From Glycera tridactyla (Eukaryota), in NCBI GenBank assembly GCA_965644265.1, contig OZ286459.1, positions 117,676,001 through 117,740,000 of the forward strand: a stretch of 64,000 bases of DNA, in the 5' to 3' direction. Position 1 is the stretch's first letter. Every line of letters starts with the position of its first letter. Below are positions 36,625 through 47,431 of this stretch, piece by piece. Below the pieces are notes generated by a model. The model was not told the origin of the DNA, made no database searches, and was given only the letters and a program-made list of their open reading frames with translations. The position numbers and the translations under genes are program-made.

Positions 36625-38139
36625 CTACAACCACACAAGAAAGAAATCAATTATATATCTCCTACGTGCCGGGGACATATGCGTTTGTATTTCACCAGTT
36701 GGGATAAATCACTCCTCATATATATCTGAACTTGGGTGTAAAAGCTGCAAAAGAAAGTGATGCAATTCAATGGCTAGCTACTTTCATCTCGTTTGCTCCA
36801 CCTGGGCTGTATGGAGATGCCTAACAGGGCTATGGCTGGATTCAATCGAACCTAGTGTTCTTGAATCCACAATAAGTGGACACCCACTCAAATCACGCAA
36901 GGGTAGAGTGCTGAGATGGGAACTACCAATGCGCTTTTCATACAATGTTGATATAATCGCTGTGTGAAATCTCCAGGAAATACATCAAGACTGTCAGACA
37001 TACTTTCTTTCAAAAGTTTAGCGGAGATTAGTTAAGGATGCAGCCTCGCCGATTCTCCAATGACATTTGAAGCAAGAGTTGTAGCACCCCAATAATAATA
37101 GAACTGGGTAGTTAGTTTTGGCCTGGGTCGAGAGGGCTGCAGAGGGTGGATTAGTTCTACTGAAGCAGGGGCTTAGGCCATGTCAATCGATTGATGGATG
37201 GAGTTCTAGTCGTCTTCAAATGTTCAGCCCAACATCAATCAATTAGGTATGACCGATTTAGCAGCGGTACGAGTCTGGTAGCCGGGCTCATGGGGATGAA
37301 TAATCGGGGACCACGTAAAGCCGTATTTAACATCATATTCCACGAGAGATCAGAAGTGTAAGAGGGACAAAGGGAAAGGGGACACAAATGAGAGATGGAG
37401 AGAAAGGGAGAGGGAAAGTAGGGTTATAGGGTAGGATTATATGGAAGAGAGAGANNNNNNNNNNNNNNNNNNNNNNNNNNNNNNNNNNNNNNNNNNNNNN
37501 NNNNNNNNNNNNNNNNNNNNNNNNNNNNNNNNNNNNNNNNNNNNNNNNNNNNNNNNNNNNNNNNNNNNNNNNNNNNNNNNNNNNNNNAAACATAGAAGAG
37601 AGGGGCAGAGAGAAAGACAATTAGGAGGGGAGAGACGGGGAAGTGAGAGGGCAGGTCTAGGCATCCATGGAGCGTGGAAGTAAAATTGAGTCATTTGAAA
37701 TAAAACTGGGAATGTGTCACATGTGGTTGTGCGTGTATGTTGGCATCTACTGTACAGGTTTCAACCGCAGTTCGATTCTCACTCAGGACAGCTGCCAGGT
37801 CATGCTATGATACGGCACCATCATGTCGTCAGGGTTGGCACAATACATGCCCATCTCCACCCTATCTTGGTTAGGCCACGATTCTGAAATTCAATATTTC
37901 TCTGCATATTATTGGTTGTACTCCCACCAACAATGGATTGAAATGTACAGTGCTCCTGCGGTCTGGAGATAAAGTTGGGAAAGCAACATCCAATTTCGGA
38001 GACCGCATTTTAAGATACAAATCCATAATTTTGGCGACGGGATAAGAATAACGAGTGAATATGAAACCTGAAGAGACACATTACCCCAAGCCCAGTTGAT
38101 ATGCAGCGGCGTGCCACTTCACTGGTGGCCACTCCACAA

Positions 38140-38216
38140 CATCAATTGCCTCCGTTTCACGGAGGGCACCCCTCCGGACAAAGGATAAGAGTGCGTTAGT
38201 CGGCTCCGAGTCTCCA
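38140..38216. repeat. DIRS left terminus (left extension plus ITR)
   Basis: 38140-38186 is the reverse complement of ICR 45016-45062. 38178-38216 is the reverse complement of 45212-45250. Confidence 0.93.
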
Positions 38217-39051
38217 GTCTGTGTTTCGGCTCCGAGCTGAAAACACCTACCCTCCTCTCCTCCCCAAGGGGGGGGGGGGGGGTTGGTGGAATGCAGCACT
38301 ACCACGCATGGCCCTTCTGAAGCCAGGCGTGGAAGATGTGATCGTCCAATTCACATCGCTTACTATCTCAACACAGTTTTCTACAACTGTGTGTGTTTTT
38401 ATCGCGACACAGCCCTTCTGAAGCTGTGCCTGCCAAGAAAAAACCTTGTACATCCAGCAATGAGTAGGTTTTCGTCTCCTGAGTGACTCAGTCCCTCTGA
38501 GGCTGTGATCCACCTAAATAGAAGGGAAAGACCAAATTTGCGGTCAATGACGGAAATTACTCATTGTTGAAATAGAAAAACAAGGTACCTCCCCAAAGCG
38601 ACCAAACTGGGCAAGAAAACCGCCCTGGCCCTTGAGATCACTATTTTTGAGAATAGAAAAGTTACAGTCATACACTGCATTGCTATGGAATGGGATGCAA
38701 GAGAACCATTCATGAGGAGTCAATTTCTCACGAAAATCTGATTCGAAAATGAACGGAAGGAGGAATGCAGGGAGTGTGAGAGTATGAATGAAAGAAATGA
38801 CGTAACTTTTTAAACTGGGTCAAGACGGCGGCAGATATAGGGCAAAAGGTGAATGGGGCAATAAAAAACCCTGCTGGAAAGATACTGGCTGGTATCCGGC
38901 AGCAGCGGCCACGACCGGGGGAATTAACCACCCTCCAGAGTGTGAAATGCCTCAAATCCGGTCTTTCCATCACTGACCGCCAGACACGCCACACGTGCTT
39001 CTCAGAACCGTTTTTGTCACTTAGCCAAAGGTGACTTTCCTGTGAAACAAA

Positions 39052-40971
39052 ATGGATCCCCATGAGGAGGATATGCCAGGAGATGACTGTCCAGACAAAA
39101 GACAGAAAAAGGTAACTCATACCAAAAAACCTAGAAAAAGTAGAAGGAATATTGAGAACACTGCCATGCCTGTCTCAGAAGCCGAGCCTAGTGTCACCTC
39201 GACTATTCTACAGGCCTTCTCACAGGCTGAGGCTTCCTTATTAGAAGCAAGTGAGGAATCGTTGCAAAACGAAATTGTCAATGAGAACACAGAGGTTTTC
39301 AACTCAGAAGAAGCAATTTCTGCTGTTGAAAATCTGCTTTTGTCTCAGGCCATTGAAAACTCTAGGACAGATGTCTCAAATGCGCCACAAGCGGGCACTA
39401 GCACAAATCAGGCCCTGACAACATCAGAAATGATACAGCGCGAATTAGAACCCTTCAAGACTCAAATGCAGGTTCTCCTCTCGCAGATTTCACAAACAGT
39501 GGCTGATAGCCAAATACCACTGGTTAATATGCGCAACCAGGCACGAACACAACAAAAAGACAAAATTGATATAGATGTAGAAAATCACGCGAACGTGGCG
39601 CATGAAATGTCATCATCTGAAGATGAAGACTCGGATGAAAACCACTACATGACGCAATTTGAAGATATTTCTGATCCGGAAATGGAAGACCCAGAAACAG
39701 AGATAAGAAATGGCCCGAAAGCCATCAGGCCAATCCCGCTCAGTGCCAATGAATTGGACAAACCCTCTGATCCACGTTTGCTGCCACAGGCAGACATGTC
39801 AGCCGCTGACCTGCCAATATTAAAATTTCAAAAGAGAAAAGATGCCAAGCAGAACAACAAGTCGACCAAAAATAAGGCAAATGAGCCAACAAAAAATCTA
39901 TCAGATGCGACAAATACTGTTCTTAATCTAGTTCAGTCAACAGACTTTTCCGTACAAGGCACGCAGCCTGTTCCGGCCACAATTCCGACAGCGTTAAATG
40001 CCCAAGCGCCAGCTGCGGTGGCACGAGCCCCCCAACACACACACACACGTGCCAACACCACCCAGGTGGTCGATTCATTGCCCATGCACATGCCACCACA
40101 AACCTCATTCCAGACAGGGGGGCCACTTCCTGGAAATCAAAATTTTGACAATTCTATCTTACGTCTGCTCCAGCAGACCGATGATGATTATTCAGAGGAT
40201 GACAAATCTGGACCACCCATATCAGAAACACTGGCGGCCAAGATTACTGAAATGTTGTCATCCAAACTAAACAAAGAAGCTATAGATAACCTAACAAAGA
40301 ATATTCTGATTCCAGAAAACGTGCCCTTGCTCAGACCCCCACTTGCAAATACAGAAATTTGGGCAAGAATGGAAGATTTCGTTAAAACAGCTGACACAAA
40401 GCGCAGACAGGCTCAAACATTGATTTCAAGGGGAGTGACTCCCCTTATAGCGCTACTCGATGAGTTACTTAACCATCATAGAATCTCGAACACTGAATTG
40501 GCGAATAAATTGTTGACCGCCATCCAATTGCTTTCAGCGGCGATGATTGAAATCACCCTCCTTCGAAGGTTTGCGCTAAGGCCTCAATTAGGCCCTTATC
40601 GTATGCTTTGTGCACGTAAGATCCCTTTCTCAAACCTTTTATTTGGAGATATTGCAAAGGAACTCAGAGAGGTGGCAGAATCGCAGGCTATTTCTGAGAG
40701 AATTTCACGGTTTGATAGGGGCAGCCGCGGAAGGGGCAACAGGGGACGGCCACGCGGTAGGTGGCAAAACAACAGTGAGAATAGTGAGGGGTCCCAGGGA
40801 GGCAATGAGACAGGCAGTGACAGGGGCAGGGGCCAGAGACGCCCATACCAGGACTCACAAGGTCAAAATCAAAACCCTGGCACATCCTCACAGAATGGTG
40901 GAAATGATCCCACAAACCGATCCCCACAAGCTAAATACCGACGTGGAGCACGTGGCAGGTCACAACGATGA
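39052..40971 (+). CDS. DIRS ORF1, gag-like protein (639 aa)
   Basis: Long open ORF directly upstream of pol. Contains IPENVPLLRPPLANTEIW...D and an RG-rich C-terminus; no CCHC knuckle seen. Confidence 0.85.
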   Translation: MDPHEEDMPGDDCPDKRQKKVTHTKKPRKSRRNIENTAMPVSEAEPSVTSTILQAFSQAEASLLEASEESLQNEIVNENTEVFNSEEAISAVENLLLSQAIENSRTDVSNAPQAGTSTNQALTTSEMIQRELEPFKTQMQVLLSQISQTVADSQIPLVNMRNQARTQQKDKIDIDVENHANVAHEMSSSEDEDSDENHYMTQFEDISDPEMEDPETEIRNGPKAIRPIPLSANELDKPSDPRLLPQADMSAADLPILKFQKRKDAKQNNKSTKNKANEPTKNLSDATNTVLNLVQSTDFSVQGTQPVPATIPTALNAQAPAAVARAPQHTHTRANTTQVVDSLPMHMPPQTSFQTGGPLPGNQNFDNSILRLLQQTDDDYSEDDKSGPPISETLAAKITEMLSSKLNKEAIDNLTKNILIPENVPLLRPPLANTEIWARMEDFVKTADTKRRQAQTLISRGVTPLIALLDELLNHHRISNTELANKLLTAIQLLSAAMIEITLLRRFALRPQLGPYRMLCARKIPFSNLLFGDIAKELREVAESQAISERISRFDRGSRGRGNRGRPRGRWQNNSENSEGSQGGNETGSDRGRGQRRPYQDSQGQNQNPGTSSQNGGNDPTNRSPQAKYRRGARGRSQR

Positions 40972-42944
40972 TGGCAGCTGAACAGGAAACACCTCCCAGA
41001 GAAGTAAGTCACTCTCCTATTCCACTGACGGGGGCAACCCAGCTCAAGATACGTAAATGGAGGGAGATTACATCAAATCAATACATATTGCGGGTGATTG
41101 CATCAGGACTTAGGATAGAGTTTACTAAACAGCCCACACAGTCACACAGACCAACCACCTGCACACAAGAACATTTGCATGAACATGTAGACCAAGAAGT
41201 CAAAAAACTGTTGAAAAACAATGTCATTGAGCTGTGCCAACCGGAACCTGGGGATTTTTATTCTACTATTTTCTTGACACCTAAGAAAACGCCAGGACAG
41301 TATCGGATGATCATAAACCTGAAGCCGCTGAAAAAATTCATTGAAAAGACAAAATTCAAAATGGATACTGTTACCACTTGCATGACTCTCATGCAGCCAG
41401 AACATTGGATGATGTCTATAGACCTCCAAGATGCATATTATAGCATCCTGGTGCATCCCAGAGACAGAAAGTATTTACGATTCAAATGGGGGGGAAAACA
41501 CTACCAGTACAGGGCAATGCCAATGGGATTATCACCATCCCCACGCATTTTCACGAAAATTACAAAACCCATCATGGCACATTTGAGGGAAGAGGGGATC
41601 ACAGGATCGATCTATTTGGATGATATTTGGCTGCAATGTGAGTCAAAAGGAGACTGCCTCCAGGCAGGACTTTATGCCATCAATTTCCTGCGCGATCTAG
41701 GTTTCACAGTAAATGAGAAGAAGTCGGTCGTTTACCCCACTCAAATCATTGAACATTTGGGATTCAAACTCAATACCTTGGATATGTCAGTGTCACTAAC
41801 AGATGAAAAAATTGAACGACTCAAGGTTCGAGCGGCACCGGTTCTCGCCAGTCAAGCCACAATTAGAGAAACTATGGGCCTGTTAGGGACCATGCAATCT
41901 TGCATACCAGGGACACAAAATGGTAATCTATTCAAACACACCCTAGAACGTAGGAAAAACTTGGCAGTTGCTGCAGAGAGAGGGAACCTTGAAGCAAGAT
42001 TTCTAACACCAGACGAGGTGATTCCAGACATACAATGGTGGTTAGTAAAAGCAGCAACAGACCACAGAAAACTGATCAGCCCCCCTACTGATATAGAGGT
42101 GTCCACGGATGCATCATTAGAGGGATGGGGCATTTGGTGTGCACAGACAGCCGAGAGGGCGCAAGGACGTTGGACAGTAACAGAGGGCCAACATCACATA
42201 AATACACTTGAACTCAGGGCAGTCAGATGGGGCCTGCAAGCACTATTACATACAGTGAAAAACAAACATGTACACATCCTCACAGACAATTCCACCACTG
42301 TGACGTACATAAATCAGAAAGGGGGATGTCGATCAAGATCCTGTAATGAAGAAACGAGGAGTTTGTGGCTGTGGGCTCTAGAACACAATATTATGATGAC
42401 AGCGAATCATGTACCAGGCATAGAGAATAATATTGCTGACTCCCTGAGCCGCACATTCAATGATAGGTCAGAATGGAGTCTGTCAAAAAAGCTATTTGAT
42501 CGAGGATGCACTCTCCTAGATATCAAGCCTGACATCGATCTATTTGCTTCAAGGTTGAACACAAAATGCATGAAATATGTTTCTTTTCACTTCGACCCTT
42601 TTGCCTATGAAATTGATGCTTTTAGACTGCGATGGAAGGACTTAGGACTTATATACTGTTTTCCTCCTTTCAGCATGGTGGCAAAGGTGCTACAGAAAAT
42701 TCAAATAGAGAGAATTATGGCAGTACTGGTGGTCCCGAAGTGGCCTTCGGCGGCATGGTTCGCGCAACTACTGACGTGCCTGCAAGGCAACCCACTGGAA
42801 ATAGTGGTAGACGCACAAAACGTTCAATTGCCACACGCGCCAGGGAAGCCACACCCACTTCAGGGTCATCTGAGGCTGTGGATGTGCCTGGTTTCAGGAG
42901 AGCACTCGAAAAAGTTAACTTGCCCAGGGCTGCAAAGGATATAA
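40968..42944 (+). CDS. DIRS ORF2: reverse transcriptase, RNase H and methyltransferase-like domain (658 aa)
   Basis: RT: FYSTIFLTPKK, RMIINLK, SIDLQDAY, MPMGLSPSPRIFTK, YLDD. RNase H: TDAS, HINTLELRA, TDN, HVPGIENNIADSLSR. MT-like: IDLFAS, YCFPPF, VPKWPSAAWF. Confidence 0.97.
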   Translation: MMAAEQETPPREVSHSPIPLTGATQLKIRKWREITSNQYILRVIASGLRIEFTKQPTQSHRPTTCTQEHLHEHVDQEVKKLLKNNVIELCQPEPGDFYSTIFLTPKKTPGQYRMIINLKPLKKFIEKTKFKMDTVTTCMTLMQPEHWMMSIDLQDAYYSILVHPRDRKYLRFKWGGKHYQYRAMPMGLSPSPRIFTKITKPIMAHLREEGITGSIYLDDIWLQCESKGDCLQAGLYAINFLRDLGFTVNEKKSVVYPTQIIEHLGFKLNTLDMSVSLTDEKIERLKVRAAPVLASQATIRETMGLLGTMQSCIPGTQNGNLFKHTLERRKNLAVAAERGNLEARFLTPDEVIPDIQWWLVKAATDHRKLISPPTDIEVSTDASLEGWGIWCAQTAERAQGRWTVTEGQHHINTLELRAVRWGLQALLHTVKNKHVHILTDNSTTVTYINQKGGCRSRSCNEETRSLWLWALEHNIMMTANHVPGIENNIADSLSRTFNDRSEWSLSKKLFDRGCTLLDIKPDIDLFASRLNTKCMKYVSFHFDPFAYEIDAFRLRWKDLGLIYCFPPFSMVAKVLQKIQIERIMAVLVVPKWPSAAWFAQLLTCLQGNPLEIVVDAQNVQLPHAPGKPHPLQGHLRLWMCLVSGEHSKKLTCPGLQRI

Positions 42945-43879
42945 TCCTTAAATCATGGAGGCCCAGTACCATGAAACAATACAAATCCTACCTAGGAAGG
43001 TGGGAGATTTTCTGTGAGATGCACAATTTAGATGCAGACTACCCATCTGAAATACATATCATTGATTTTCTGAACTCACTTTTTGAACAGAATCTGTCAA
43101 TTACGGCTGTCAAGGCAGCGAAAGCAGCAATTACTACATTAAGAATCCTGAATTGTGGATGCATGGCGCCAATGCCATTATTAGATCAGTTCATGAAAGG
43201 TGTGTCTATACTGCGACCACCCCGGGCAAAACATGAGAATATCTGGGACCCGGATGTTGTTGTGGCCTATATTGAGACGCTACCTGATAACGCGGCCATG
43301 ACACTTTTTGAATTGAACAAAAAATTGGCAACATTATTGGCATTGGCCACGGGCCAGAGAATTCAGACCCTTCACGCGCTAAATATCCAAAACCTCACCG
43401 TCACAAGCGAGTATGTTATTTTTCATGTCAAAGAGCGAATGAAACAGACTACAGGCACACGAAAATCGCCATCTATAGTGCTCCCTGTTCTGGCGGAAAA
43501 TGCGAAAATCTGCGTGGTGCGCTGCTTATTGCAATATCTCAAAACTACGAAAAACATTAGACAAACAATAACAAAGCTGTTTGTCACATCAAACGAGCCA
43601 ACCACGCAGGCATCTCAAAAAACCATCAGTGGATGGATAAAGAGAACGATCACGGCAGCTGGTATCAAAACCACATTTTCTGCACATTCAACCAGAGCAG
43701 CCGTGGCAAGCAAAGCAGCGCAAAGTATGACTATTAATGAGATCATGGAAGCGGTTGACTGGAAATCCAGGTCAGTTTTCCGCAGACATTATTTACGGCC
43801 AATTAGCTCGCTGGCAACTTTAACCCACTCAGTACTGCCTGCACACTCTCTATTTGGAAAAAACGGGAGCCTACCATGA
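42632..43879 (+). CDS. DIRS ORF3, tyrosine recombinase (415 aa from the first ATG)
   Basis: SAM-like N-domain SWRPSTMKQY; catalytic R (ATGQR), H-x-x-R (AHSTR), W and Y (DWKSRSVFRRHY). Overlaps pol by 313 nt in another frame. Confidence 0.95.
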   Translation: MEGLRTYILFSSFQHGGKGATENSNRENYGSTGGPEVAFGGMVRATTDVPARQPTGNSGRRTKRSIATRAREATPTSGSSEAVDVPGFRRALEKVNLPRAAKDIILKSWRPSTMKQYKSYLGRWEIFCEMHNLDADYPSEIHIIDFLNSLFEQNLSITAVKAAKAAITTLRILNCGCMAPMPLLDQFMKGVSILRPPRAKHENIWDPDVVVAYIETLPDNAAMTLFELNKKLATLLALATGQRIQTLHALNIQNLTVTSEYVIFHVKERMKQTTGTRKSPSIVLPVLAENAKICVVRCLLQYLKTTKNIRQTITKLFVTSNEPTTQASQKTISGWIKRTITAAGIKTTFSAHSTRAAVASKAAQSMTINEIMEAVDWKSRSVFRRHYLRPISSLATLTHSVLPAHSLFGKNGSLP

Positions 43880-44028
43880 AGATGCCAAGGTTGGACCTGT
43901 CACTTGCCAAGACCACCGGTGATGTGTATCATATTCCACCACTCGATTTTTTGGAGTTTTTCTGACATTTTAAGAAAAACTTTCTACTACCGTTGAACTT
44001 ACTGGATATTTGTCTGTGTTATTTCCAG

Positions 44029-44421
44029 ATGGCATACTCCATGAACCTGCCGTCTCCATGGGAGAGAAGCTTTTATGCAGAACGATTCACAGTGCATAAG
44101 GATTACGAAGATGACCTGATAAAGGCATGCATTTTCAACCTGAGCCACTGCATTATGGTGCGCAGATCACCATGCACATGTGTAACATGTGAGCCAGTAT
44201 ATACTTATCAACAAATCAAGGTTGAGTTTGTATTCATCATCAGCGAACCTGGGGAACATACCAGTTGGCAAGATGTGAGAGATAACATCAGGGCTGTCCG
44301 CCAGATGGAGGTTGCAACTGTGGTATGGGACTACATTACTGCTCGGTACCCAGACGCTATCCCACGGTTCTCCCAGCGCATTCGTGTGGTTTGTGACGAC
44401 GGTTTCGTGTATGAGGTCTGA
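44029..44421 (+). CDS. Extra ORF4 inside the DIRS element (130 aa, unknown function)
   Basis: ATG immediately after a strong acceptor (TTTGTCTGTGTTATTTCCAG|ATG). Complex protein-like sequence with an H-C-x7-C-x-C-x2-C cluster. Lies between YR and the ICR. Confidence 0.6.
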   Translation: MAYSMNLPSPWERSFYAERFTVHKDYEDDLIKACIFNLSHCIMVRRSPCTCVTCEPVYTYQQIKVEFVFIISEPGEHTSWQDVRDNIRAVRQMEVATVVWDYITARYPDAIPRFSQRIRVVCDDGFVYEV

Positions 44422-45015
44422 GTCAACAGCATCGTGAACAGCACCCACTAGCCGGAGAGGCCGGCCAACACACTACAATGACACTCACGCACACACACAC
44501 CACATACACGCATCCTGGTAACAACATAACATGTACCCCGCTGGGTGCACAATACCACATCTGGACCAGAACTTTGAAAGATATGTCAGAGGGGAGGAGG
44601 GACAAGAAGAATTATATTTGATAAATATTTTACAAACAACTGCGTGATGTTTTGACTGAGGGGGAGGGGGGGGGGGAGAAATTCCCCCTCTCCCTCTCCC
44701 AAAGGCACCGAATGCCTATAGAGTTCATGATGTGTGTTAACATATGAACTACAAACCAGTACTAGGGACCCGGTACCTTCGGGGTGCGAGAGCCTTAGTT
44801 GCACACTGGTTGAAGTTTTTCTTATTTACATGACAATTGTTTGCCTGGGGCCCCAATACCTGGGGGGTGTGAGTGCCTCAGGAATGTATCAGTCTTTACA
44901 AACCACCTGATTATTGTACCTCGTGGCCTGATGAATAATTAGAGTTACTCGAGACAATTAGGGGTTTTTCAGCTGTAGTGAGCCTAAACATGGACATGTT
45001 TTGAGATCTACAAAG

Positions 45016-45142
45016 ATCCTTTGTCCGGAGGGGTGCCCTCCGTGAAACGGAGGCAATTGATGGAAGGTTAGACCTAGAGTAACGTGGTCTAACCTACATC
45101 AGTTGCCTGTTTCACGGGGGGCACCCCGAAGGATTAACAAAG
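45016..45142. repeat. DIRS internal complementary region (ICR)
   Basis: The left half is complementary to the left terminus and the right half to 45247-45327. Its reverse complement reads as the circle junction ...CTAACCTTC-CAT-CAATTGCC... Confidence 0.93.
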
Positions 45143-45211
45143 CCCACCCGGGCTACCCACCCTTGTTAATCCTTCCTTTTCTGCTTCTCACAAAACATGT
45201 GTCTGCAAAAT

Positions 45212-45327
45212 TGGAGACTCGGAGCCGACTAACGCACTCTTATCCTTTGTTAATCCTTCGGGGTGCCCCCCGTGAAACAGGCAACTGATGTAGGTTAGAC
45301 CACGTTACTCTAGGTCTAACCTTCCAT
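45212..45327. repeat. DIRS right terminus (ITR plus right extension)
   Basis: TGGAGACTCGGAGCCGACTAACGCACTCTTATCCTTTGT, then an extension complementary to the ICR, ending CTAACCTTCCAT. Confidence 0.93.
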
Positions 45328-47431
45328 TGGGGACATGTGATCTCTGCCAAGGCCAACACCACCATCGGGTGAAATATGCCGTATTCATGTCATATTATGG
45401 CCATGAAATTAGCACGAACTATGAAATGGAGCCCGTAGAAAGCATCACCTAATGATAGCACTAAGTGTTTCCCGAATTTCTATGGATTTGATACTGCAGG
45501 ATATCTAGGGAGAAAATGATAGGTATTGGAAAAGAAACACCTCCTGTTGGCACGCTTGGGTATAAACAATAAGTGCACATCCCAATACTACTTATTATTT
45601 GTGGGTCAGCAAAACAAGCCATCATAATATTTGTGTATATTCGCTCTTGTCTTCTGCGCATTCGTTTCATGGCCAAACTGAGAGTCAAAATTGAAAAGCT
45701 TTGTGCGAATTCTCAATCGAACAACAGCTCCACGGTCAGACACGGAATATCATTCACAAAGTGTGTATCCTGACGTATCTGATTCGTCAAACTTCCCAAA
45801 TCCCGACATATAACTAAATATATGATTCAGTGCTGGATGCTGTTCCCGATAGATAGAGCAGATCAGCCGGGGAGAGTGAAGTCAGATATTAGATGTAGCT
45901 ACGATGTGCAGATCGGGCTAACCTGGACGGACATTGATCACCATGCTAAACCATCAAAGAAGAGAAATACTGATGACAGAATAGCGGGCCTGCGTTGCCG
46001 AGAGAACAATATTTTCTCTTGCTATCTAGGCTAAAGCAGCAATTCAATATTCAGCCAGTGTTGATGCTTTAGCCTGGTACATTGTGAAGTGACATAAACT
46101 CTAACTGGTGTATTTAATTATTGACATGAGGAATACATTTTGTAGCCCCCTATAGCAACAAACGCAGACATTACACAAATACATGAGCTATATCAAAAGA
46201 TACAATCGTTGTCTTCATTTGCTCCATACTAATCTTTTTAGCCAGTTTGGCTTAAGATTGTAAATTTCTTCAGCCAGACGCCAAAAGCTCTAGTCCCTGG
46301 CTAAGAGGCTTATGACTAGCCCTGACAGAGCCTGTGTATATGGGCGGAAGGCTAGTCGGGTTCATATGGCCTGCTCATGTGATAGGCTTCATATGGTCAG
46401 TGTGTGAGCGCCGAGAGAGGCGGTCGTGTTTCGAAGCAGACAGAGGATACATGCATATATTAGACGAGGTATGATGGCGGTGTCTCGAGCATCTAGACAC
46501 GTCTAGACAGTCGTACCAGCATCGGTTTGTGCGTCTGCGTGCGTCATGATATCTCCCCATACATAAATGAATAGATCATATCCGTTTCAATGAGATGATG
46601 AAAAGGTAGACATGCACATGCAGTATCATCTCCTCAATTCTTTTTAGCATGTGCATTGTGGGTGTNNNNNNNNNNNNNNNNNNNNNNNNNNNNNNNNNNN
46701 NNNNNNNNNNNNNNNNNNNNNNNNNNNNNNNNNNNNNNNNNNNNNNNNNNNNNNNNNNNNNNNNNNNNNNNNNNNNNNNNNNNNNNNNNNNNNNNNNNNN
46801 NNNNNNNNNNNNNNNNNNNNNNNNNNNNNNNNNNNNNNNNNNNNNNNNNNNNNNNNNNNNNNNNNNNNNNNNNNNNNNNNNNNNNNNNNNNNNNNNNNNN
46901 NNNNNNNNNNNNNNNNNNNNNNNNNNNNNNNNNNNNNNNNNNNNNNNNNNNNNNNCGGTGAAAATCACCAACAATAAGCTATCCATCTGGCCCTAAAAGA
47001 TGTATCTTTTGTGATACTATTTATAGGCTACATAGATGGTTGGCTGTGGTCATAAAACATGGCTCAGAGCTTGAGCAGGTACAATACCGATCCACCCGGC
47101 CATTGGGCAGGTGGATTTCCCAAATGATCCCCAAATCGTGTTACGTTATAAACTTTGTGGATGCTTCAGCAACCGATCGGCGCGTACTTCGCACAATGGT
47201 TCATAGATCAATGGCATGTTCTCAAGATATTCATGTCATGCACTGATATTGATTTCTCGATGAAAACAGAAATGTTCACGTAAGTAGGGGCTGGTTGACT
47301 GGTAGGCTGATTTCTTCATGGTGAAGCCGTAACTGCAATTATGCCACGCCGTTATAATGGAGGGGACGTGATTCGTGCCCTAACCAGCGAAACCAGTAAT
47401 GATACCGAACCAGAGTTCGGCACAAGTGAAC

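What the first reader, a model, noticed from the sequence alone, without database searches (positions are those of the whole stretch)
44009..44421. Fourth, unknown ORF carried inside the DIRS element behind a splice acceptor
Canonical DIRS1 elements encode gag, RT/RH/MT and YR only. Here a 130-aa ORF (MAYSMNLPSPWERSFYAERF...SHCIMVRRSPCTCVTCEP...VVCDDGFVYEV) lies between YR and the ICR, on the sense strand. Its ATG directly follows a polypyrimidine-CAG acceptor, and strong donors exist near the 5' end (for example AAG|GTAACT near 39112). This suggests a spliced subgenomic mRNA for an accessory, possibly Zn-binding protein such as a silencing suppressor or captured host domain (inference). It is the best candidate for an undescribed component in this window.
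Basis: partly seen in the sequence, partly recalled or inferred. Interest (0 to 1): 0.75.

Follow-up and report, generated by a model that had tools for sequence, protein, structure and literature searches.

The report
Conserved fourth gene in DIRS retrotransposons
A group of jumping genes (DIRS retrotransposons) in this mollusc genome carries a previously undescribed, well-conserved fourth gene for a small acidic protein, flanked by conserved splice signals that suggest it is made from a shortened (spliced) RNA, much as retroviruses make their extra proteins.

Summary
The ORF is real: ATG 44029, stop 44419-44421, 130 aa, + strand. It lies between the tyrosine recombinase (YR) gene and the internal complementary region of an intact DIRS1-like element (38140-45327).

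It is not a chance ORF. About 100 copies in this genome match it at 25-73% identity. In almost all of about 50 copies read it lies 53-208 nt behind a YR gene. Non-saturated pairs give dN/dS of 0.09-0.23, and ORF4 divergence tracks YR divergence (r = 0.93).

In 19 of 20 lineages the ATG directly follows a pyrimidine-rich run plus C/TAG. In 10 of 10 full elements a donor-like GT lies 17-52 nt before the gag ATG (window: 39030|39031). This fits a retrovirus-like spliced subgenomic mRNA. No RNA read confirms it, and no processed DNA copy was found.

The protein folds confidently (pLDDT 88; three long strands, a helix, two strands). It is acidic, has no membrane segment, and carries an invariant His and a conserved CxxC. 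No homologue or clear fold match was found in any library searched.

Only a small clade carries ORF4: about 100-150 copies against more than 8,000 YR candidates.

The papers I could search describe DIRS-like elements with three ORFs. Function is unknown.

A first-stage note (s1-314057) flagged the same idea on another copy.

The parts
38140..38216 (+). Left terminal repeat of the DIRS1-like element. 38140-38186 is complementary to the ICR; 38178-38216 is complementary to the right ITR.
   Evidence: inverted pairs I2 (47 nt) and I3 (39 nt), both 100% complementary
38217..39030 (+). 5' leader, proposed as exon 1 of the subgenomic RNA. The transcription start is unknown. The last ATG in the leader is at 38947 and opens a short uORF.
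39028..39036 (+). Leader splice-donor-like site AAG|GTGACT (exon ends 39030, GT 39031-39032), 21 nt upstream of the gag ATG. The position is conserved in 10 of 10 full elements.
   Evidence: binomial P about 1e-8 against the elements' own donor density
39052..40971 (+). ORF1 (gag-like), 639 aa
39109..39117 (+). Alternative in-frame donor-like site AAG|GTAACT (GT 39112), after gag codon 20, phase 0. It is shared only with the two closest lineages.
   Evidence: one contig of run X1 reads through it unspliced
40968..42944 (+). ORF2: RT / RNase H / Dam-like methyltransferase
   Evidence: RVT_1 1.2e-23, RT_RNaseH 3.8e-6, Dam 9e-5
42632..43879 (+). ORF3: tyrosine recombinase, 415 aa
   Evidence: Phage_integrase 6.2e-12
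43880..44028 (+). YR-ORF4 spacer, ending in the acceptor-like signal: branch-point-like CTTAC 43998-44002, T/C-rich run about 44006-44025, CAG 44026-44028
   Evidence: no consistent local donor in or before the spacer
44029..44421 (+). ORF4: 130-aa acidic protein of an orphan family. Conserved features: PW..S near the N-terminus, His40, C.CxxC at 49-54, EP 73-74, Trp80, G..YE(I/V) at the C-terminus.
45016..45142 (+). Internal complementary region. 45016-45062 is complementary to the left end; 45060-45142 is complementary to the right end.
   Evidence: I1, I2
45212..45327 (+). Right inverted terminal repeat
   Evidence: I1, I3

Best explanation
ORF4 is a real, selected accessory gene carried by one clade of DIRS1-like retrotransposons in this mollusc genome. 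It has been inherited along with the element's recombinase since before the present lineages split (down to about 26-30% protein identity).

It is most likely expressed from a singly spliced subgenomic RNA. A donor in the 5' leader, just upstream of the gag start (window 39030|39031), would be joined to an acceptor that directly abuts the ORF4 start codon (44028|44029). This removes gag, pol and YR and puts the ORF4 AUG where the gag AUG sits in the full-length RNA.

Shown here: the gene, its selection, its linkage to the element, and conservation of both splice-like signals. Inferred: the splice itself.

The product is a soluble, acidic, roughly 15-kDa alpha/beta protein with a conserved CxxC in the loop predicted to join the second and third strands. 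My best guess, with low confidence, is a protein-binding regulator. It might pair through a shared metal site, and it would act on the element's own basic proteins or on a host factor rather than binding nucleic acid or membranes.
For: The gene is real and selected.
- 85 single-sequence and 101 profile matches in the genome, most full length and without stops.
- dN/dS is 0.09-0.23 in all 8 closely related pairs (dS 0.19-0.83).
- The family alignment has invariant W11, S14, H40 and C51.
- The AlphaFold2 model from 20 family members has pLDDT 87.8 and pTM 0.74.

It is part of the element.
- In almost all of about 50 copies read it lies 53-208 nt after a YR gene.
- Eleven further copies fetched at full element length all hold gag, pol, YR and ORF4 in the same order; several are damaged.
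- ORF4 identity tracks YR identity: r = 0.93, Mantel P about 2e-4.

Acceptor.
- C/TAG directly before the ATG in 19 of 20 lineages (80% identity clusters). The twentieth is offset by 1 nt.
- Mean pyrimidine fraction at -23..-4 is 0.69 against a background of 0.50.
- CTTAC branch-like motifs recur upstream.

Donor.
- A donor-like GT, mostly AAG|GTGAG, lies 17-52 nt before the gag ATG in 10 of 10 elements whose gag start could be placed (P about 1e-8).

A local YR-ORF4 intron or fusion is unlikely. There is no recurrent donor near the YR 3' end, and the frame relation between YR and ORF4 varies among 0, 1 and 2.

The product is soluble and acidic. Net charge is -2 to -14 in 18 of 20 lineages, with no hydrophobic N-terminus or membrane segment.
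Against: - No RNA evidence. Runs X1-X3 gave only two short contigs (39075-39323 and 44189-44339) and no joint. One contig reads through the 39112 site unspliced. It is not certain that these runs are RNA.
- A spliced RNA would keep both ends and the ICR, so it could itself be copied into DNA. No leader-joined-to-ORF4 copy was found among about 50 copies.
- Donor scoring used a simple matrix I wrote from generic splice-donor frequencies, not a trained mollusc model.
- The leader donor might serve another acceptor instead, for example the acceptor-like run at the start of the YR frame.
- The lineages compared are related, so the counts are not fully independent.
- Function has no direct support. 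There is no homologue and no clear fold match, and the complex test with YR gave no verdict.
Confidence: 0.7

Rival explanations
1. ORF4 is a real gene, but in the window's clade it is made as a fusion. The in-frame donor after gag codon 20 (39111|39112, the reader's donor) would be joined to the ORF4 acceptor, giving Gag(1-20)-ORF4. This could coexist with the leader splice.
For: Phase-0 donor-like sites (AAG|GTAAC, AAG|GTAAA, CAG|GTAAA) lie at gag codons 20, 24 and 26 in the window copy and its two closest lineages. Both junction phases are 0, so the fusion would be in frame.
Against: The site is absent or in phase 1 in the other lineages, where the donor-like sequence comes from coding of a KSKR motif. 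An ATG is kept at the first codon after the acceptor in all lineages, which a fusion would not need. One contig reads through 39112 unspliced.
Confidence: 0.15
2. ORF4 is a real gene expressed without internal splicing. It could come from an internal promoter in the YR 3' region or spacer. Alternatively, its acceptor could capture splicing from upstream host exons when the element sits in an intron.
For: No spliced RNA and no processed DNA copies were found. One paper infers that a DIRS gag-derived sequence co-opted by host genes probably carried its own alternative splice acceptor (PMC4495291).
Against: An internal promoter does not explain a pyrimidine run plus YAG abutting the ATG in 19 of 20 lineages. 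Host-exon capture does not explain the conserved donor just before the gag ATG.
Confidence: 0.12
3. ORF4 is a diverged PD-(D/E)XK-type or tRNA-splicing-endonuclease-like nuclease that helps process the element's DNA or RNA intermediates.
For: The strand-strand-strand-helix-strand order matches the core of that fold. Low-scoring matches of this kind recur in three libraries: YraN/UPF0102, PDDEXK_1 and Cas4 clusters (TM 0.42-0.47); tRNA splicing endonucleases, EXO5 and the R2 endonuclease domain (Z 4.4-4.9); UL24 and RecE-like proteins.
Against: All scores are below the tools' stated noise level (best Z 6.7; typical best for unmatched models is 7-8). No conserved D...(D/E)xK motif is present: position 66 is D/E in only 17 of 20 and no Lys follows it. 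There is no Pfam or PDB sequence match, even with the profile.
Confidence: 0.08
4. The ORF is a chance open frame or a decaying remnant with no function.
For: No homologue was found outside this genome in any library.
Against: About 100 copies down to 25% identity remain open and full length. dN/dS is 0.09-0.23. Motifs are conserved and the fold prediction is confident.
Confidence: 0.02

Closest known systems
Canonical DIRS1-like retrotransposons (Dictyostelium DIRS-1; vertebrate and decapod DIRS1-like families)
   Same: gag-like ORF, RT/RNase H/Dam-like MT ORF overlapping a tyrosine recombinase ORF, inverted terminal repeats, and an internal complementary region made of the complements of both termini (PMC3266345, PMC9210276).
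   Different: The surveys I read describe three ORFs (PMC3266345, PMC9210276); one paper counts four by splitting RT and RNase H (PMC4495291). None places a gene after YR. I found no report of natural splicing for a 3' gene. Here a fourth gene follows YR and carries conserved splice-like signals.
Ngaro-like elements with an extra ORF after YR (SGNH hydrolase)
   Same: A tyrosine-recombinase retrotransposon with an additional protein gene besides gag, RT/RH and YR (PMC9210276).
   Different: ORF4 has no SGNH or any other Pfam domain. The element has ITR/ICR ends and an MT domain, which are DIRS1-like features, not the split direct repeats of Ngaro.
Retroviral expression of env and accessory genes from singly spliced RNA (major 5' splice donor upstream of the gag AUG; acceptor just before the 3' gene)
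   Same: The predicted geometry matches: a donor 17-52 nt before the gag ATG, and an acceptor in front of a gene that follows the enzyme genes. The retroviral side of this comparison rests on general knowledge, not on a tool result.
   Different: The element is not an LTR element or retrovirus. The product has no signal peptide or membrane anchor, so it is not an envelope protein. Splicing is inferred, not observed.
PD-(D/E)XK / EndA-like nuclease fold
   Same: Same order of secondary-structure elements. Weak structural matches recur.
   Different: No catalytic motif, scores in the noise range, and no sequence-profile match.

Membership tests
DIRS1-like retrotransposon (host element) | RT/RNase H polyprotein with a Dam-like methyltransferase domain | tested here: met
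   RVT_1 1.2e-23, RT_RNaseH 3.8e-6. Dam 9e-5, which is below Pfam's own cut-off but in the expected position.
DIRS1-like retrotransposon (host element) | Tyrosine recombinase instead of a DDE integrase | tested here: met
   Phage_integrase 6.2e-12 in ORF3
DIRS1-like retrotransposon (host element) | Inverted terminal repeats plus an internal complementary region matching both termini | tested here: met
   three perfectly complementary pairs (47, 39 and 83 nt) in the expected arrangement
DIRS1-like retrotransposon (host element) | Three ORFs only (gag, pol, YR), as in published descriptions | tested here: not met
   A fourth conserved gene follows YR. This is a departure from the usual description; the defining enzymes and ends are all met.
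Ngaro-type extra ORF | SGNH hydrolase domain in the extra ORF | tested here: not met
   No Pfam family at E <= 0.01 in the window's protein, and none shared by more than 2 of the 20 aligned members
Retroviral or errantiviral env | Signal peptide and transmembrane anchor | tested here: not met
   the highest 19-residue Kyte-Doolittle mean is 0.70-1.67, and the N-terminal 20 residues are not hydrophobic
Spliced subgenomic mRNA (retrovirus-like expression) | RNA molecules carrying the donor-acceptor junction | tested here: inconclusive
   only two short contigs and no joint. Conserved donor and acceptor signals are the only support.
PD-(D/E)XK nuclease superfamily | Catalytic D...(D/E)xK residues on strands 2 and 3 | tested here: not met
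   no such conserved residues
PD-(D/E)XK nuclease superfamily | Significant structural match to the core fold | tested here: inconclusive
   best Z 6.7 and TM <= 0.51; nuclease matches have Z 4.4-4.9
Zinc-binding Cys/His protein | Four conserved metal ligands close together in space | tested here: inconclusive
   H40 and C51 in 20 of 20, C54 in 19 of 20, C49 in 17 of 20. H40 sits mid-strand, 9-14 residues before the Cys loop.

The most novel reading that the evidence does not exclude
This DIRS clade is a 'complex' tyrosine-recombinase retroelement with a retrovirus-like splicing programme: full-length RNA for gag and pol, and spliced RNAs for YR and for ORF4. ORF4 would be a new kind of accessory protein, with a fold not matched in current libraries, that controls the element's own recombination or assembly or counteracts host silencing.
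Probability: 0.3. Interest if true: 0.8.

Novelty: new variant of a known kind. Interest (0 to 1): 0.66.

Why it matters
DIRS elements are the least understood order of retrotransposons. Their replication model rests largely on one amoeba element, and published descriptions give them gag, pol and YR only.

A long-maintained accessory gene with conserved splice signals would mean that some DIRS lineages regulate expression through subgenomic RNAs, as complex retroviruses do. It would also give a defined, small, foldable protein to study: its partners, any metal site, and its effect on recombination or on host silencing.

There is a practical point for annotation too. Annotation built on the three-ORF description of DIRS elements would not name such a gene.

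Tried and rejected
- Pfam on the window's ORF4 and on all 20 aligned members: nothing consistent. The best hit is TXD17-like_Trx at E = 0.032, probably driven by the CxxC.
- Word-based protein search: no hit.
- Profile search of 1.84 billion representatives: one hit (P0001, E = 9e-5). It is a tandem-repeat artefact matching only the H..R..C..C stretch.
- PDB sequence profile: none.
- ESM Atlas features: none.
- Foldseek against PDB and BFVD: nothing at E <= 1e-3.
- VIA wide search and Atlas shape search: only noise-level matches.
- Metagenome scan with ORF4: none.
- Three DIRS-like loci from other sources (YR 30-40% identical) have no ORF4-like sequence. One of them ends about 600 nt after its YR.
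- Local YR-ORF4 intron or fusion: rejected.
- ORF4 as a copy of gag, pol or YR, or of another gene in the window: rejected.
- Complex prediction of YR(95-415) with ORF4: 'no answer' (score 0.00). This is not evidence either way.
- RNA support: the single run search gave three weak runs, and laying them gave no joints.
So DIRS families without ORF4 hits could not be read directly. I also could not check whether full-length outlying hits such as C17:13384965 lie in DIRS elements.
Exons were handled separately by reference.

Full report
**What is there**

The window holds one DIRS1-like retrotransposon at 38140-45327.
- ORF1 (gag-like): 39052-40971.
- ORF2: 40968-42944, with RVT_1, RNase H and a Dam-like methyltransferase signal.
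- ORF3: 42632-43879, with a phage-integrase-type tyrosine recombinase (YR) domain.
- Three perfectly complementary inverted pairs give the classic DIRS arrangement. The left terminus is 38140-38216. The internal complementary region, 45016-45142, is made of the complements of both termini. The right repeat is 45212-45327.

The reported ORF lies between YR and the ICR on the same strand. The ATG is at 44029, the stop at 44419-44421, and the product is 130 aa.

**Is it more than chance?**

Yes. Searching the window's own 2.04-Gb genome with the protein gave 85 matches at 25-73% identity. Most cover the whole 130 residues with no stop. A profile of 20 members gave 101 matches.

In the 30 loci returned, 28 have a YR gene immediately upstream. 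All 20 further loci I fetched do as well. The spacer between YR stop and ORF4 start is 53-208 nt, usually 130-165. Eleven further copies fetched at full element length all hold gag, pol, YR and ORF4 in the same order; several of them are damaged.

The copies fall into 20 clusters at 80% protein identity and 9 at 50%.

Nei-Gojobori estimates for all 8 closely related pairs (dS 0.19-0.83) give dN/dS of 0.09-0.23.

Pairwise ORF4 identity tracks pairwise YR identity (r = 0.93, Mantel P about 2e-4, 11 elements). ORF4 evolves somewhat faster: mean identity is 37% against 50%. The gene has therefore travelled with these elements throughout their diversification and was not picked up recently by one copy.

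**Splice signals**

*Acceptor.* In 19 of 20 lineage representatives the ATG is directly preceded by CAG or TAG. In the twentieth the AG lies one base further upstream. The 20 bases before it average 69% pyrimidine against a background of 50%. A CTTAC branch-like motif lies 25-45 nt upstream in about eight lineages; in the window it is at 43998-44002. The upstream sequences show little other resemblance between the deep lineages when laid side by side, so what recurs is this signal.

*No local donor.* I looked for a partner donor nearby. None recurs near the YR 3' end or in the spacer, and the frame relation of ORF4 to YR varies among 0, 1 and 2. A short YR-ORF4 intron or fusion is therefore not supported.

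*Leader donor.* In all 10 full elements whose gag start could be placed, a donor-like GT lies 17-52 nt upstream of the gag ATG, mostly AAG|GTGAG. In the window it is AAG|GTGACT, with the exon ending at 39030. Given the elements' own density of such sites, this has a binomial P of about 1e-8.

It has counterparts only in the two closest lineages (codons 24 and 26). Early-gag donor-like sites in other lineages are in phase 1 and come from coding of a KSKR motif.

The simplest reading is a retrovirus-like arrangement: a leader donor just before the gag AUG and an acceptor abutting the ORF4 AUG. After splicing, ORF4 would take gag's place behind the same leader.

**Limits of the splicing evidence**

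Laid on 38440-44439, they gave two short, 100% identical contigs (39075-39323 and 44189-44339) and no joint. Splicing is therefore inferred, not observed.
- A spliced RNA would retain both termini and the ICR, so it might be reverse-transcribed. I found no leader-joined-to-ORF4 DNA copy among about 50 copies. This is mild evidence against frequent splicing. It could also mean that a signal needed for copying lies in the removed part.

**A side observation that fits splicing**

In 10 of 12 full elements the YR frame opens only about two codons before a conserved T/C-rich run plus CAG (window 42653-42673) and has no ATG there. The same bases encode the CFPPF motif of the methyltransferase domain in the pol frame. 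I did not pursue it further.

**The protein**

- The family alignment has invariant W11, S14, H40 and C51.
- Nearly invariant positions are P10, K24, C54, F67, E73, P74, W80, A110, I118 and G125. C49 is present in 17 of 20.
- AlphaFold2 with the 20-member alignment gives a confident model: pLDDT 87.8, pTM 0.74. It has three long antiparallel strands (13-25, 31-46, 57-72), a long helix (80-106) and two short strands.
- The C.CxxC motif sits in the loop that joins the second and third strands. H40 is mid-strand, so a four-ligand site within one chain is doubtful. A metal site shared between two chains is possible but is speculation.
- The proteins are acidic: pI 4.5-5.5 in eight of the nine computed, and net charge -2 to -14 in 18 of 20. 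They have no hydrophobic N-terminus or membrane segment. This argues against an envelope protein or a typical nucleic-acid binder.

**Homology and fold searches**

- Sequence searches found nothing usable. See the list of attempts in Tried and rejected.
- Fold searches gave nothing above noise. Foldseek on PDB and BFVD found nothing at E <= 1e-3. The VIA best Z was 6.7, and Atlas TM was <= 0.51.
- PD-(D/E)XK-like and tRNA-endonuclease-like proteins recur among the weak matches, and the strand-helix order fits that core. No catalytic motif is conserved, so I keep this only as a minor rival.
'No homologue' therefore means none outside this lineage in what could be searched.

**Distribution**

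ORF4 is confined to a small clade.
- The genome has more than 8,000 YR candidates but only about 100-150 ORF4 candidates.
- Most YR copies at 42% identity or more to the window's have an ORF4 hit just downstream. Among the top YR hits, the intact families at 36-41% identity have none nearby, and nor do the other DIRS families.
- Three DIRS-like loci from other sources (YR 30-40% identical) have no ORF4-like sequence after YR, although one ends only about 600 nt after its YR.

**Literature**

The DIRS surveys I could read (PMC3266345, PMC9210276) describe three ORFs for DIRS-like elements. They report an additional ORF (SGNH hydrolase) only for Ngaro-like elements. One paper counts four ORFs by splitting RT and RNase H but lists no gene after YR (PMC4495291). 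Full-text searches for a fourth ORF, splicing or subgenomic RNA in DIRS elements, and for mollusc DIRS, returned nothing relevant.

**Verdict**

ORF4 is a genuine, long-conserved accessory gene of one DIRS clade (confidence above 0.9). Expression through a leader-to-ORF4 splice is the best-supported mechanism (about 0.7), resting on comparative sequence evidence only. Function is open. I lean towards a soluble protein-binding regulator, possibly pairing through its CxxC loop, over a nuclease or a nucleic-acid binder, but with low confidence.

A first-stage note on another copy in the same genome (s1-314057, which matches my hit at C1:140613723) made the same suggestion and had not been followed up.

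Noticed in passing
window 42653-42673 (and the same place in L031-L041): The YR frame opens only about 2 codons before a conserved T/C-rich run plus CAG, and lacks an ATG there in 10 of 12 full elements. The same bases encode the CFPPF motif of the methyltransferase domain in the pol frame. The window copy does have an ATG at 42632.
   Followed up: partly
window 45060-45142 / 45245-45327, 38140-38186 / 45016-45062, 38178-38216 / 45212-45250: All three terminal/ICR complementary pairs are 100% complementary and all four ORFs are open. Yet the closest other ORF4 in the assembly is only 73% identical. This is an intact, apparently single-copy family.
   Followed up: partly
L009 (G000:C26:9325584-9328961): A rearranged copy: a partial ORF4 fragment (residues 69-130) at 838-1023 is followed by a second, nearly full ORF4 at 1501-1878 whose start region has been replaced (no ATG, no acceptor).
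   Followed up: no
G000:C17:13384965-13385318, C31:60236576-60236941, C17:24345836-24346180: Divergent ORF4 matches that are full length or nearly so and open. I could not fetch them, so it is unknown whether they sit in DIRS elements or are free-standing (possible host or processed copies).
   Followed up: no
window 38217-39030: The leader holds 16 ATGs, the last at 38947 (a 9-codon uORF). The final 80 nt or so before the donor have no ATG. A TATA-like GATATAGGG lies near 38834 and is shared with L031. The transcription start may therefore lie well inside the leader.
   Followed up: no
window 40700-40971 (gag C-terminus): The gag C-terminal region is very rich in Arg/Gly (RG repeats) and basic. 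It is a possible partner for the acidic ORF4. No Pfam domain was found in gag, including LAP2alpha, which is reported for vertebrate DIRS gag (PMC9210276).
   Followed up: no
window 37333-37694 and 46576-46996: Masked N stretches flank the element region.
   Followed up: no
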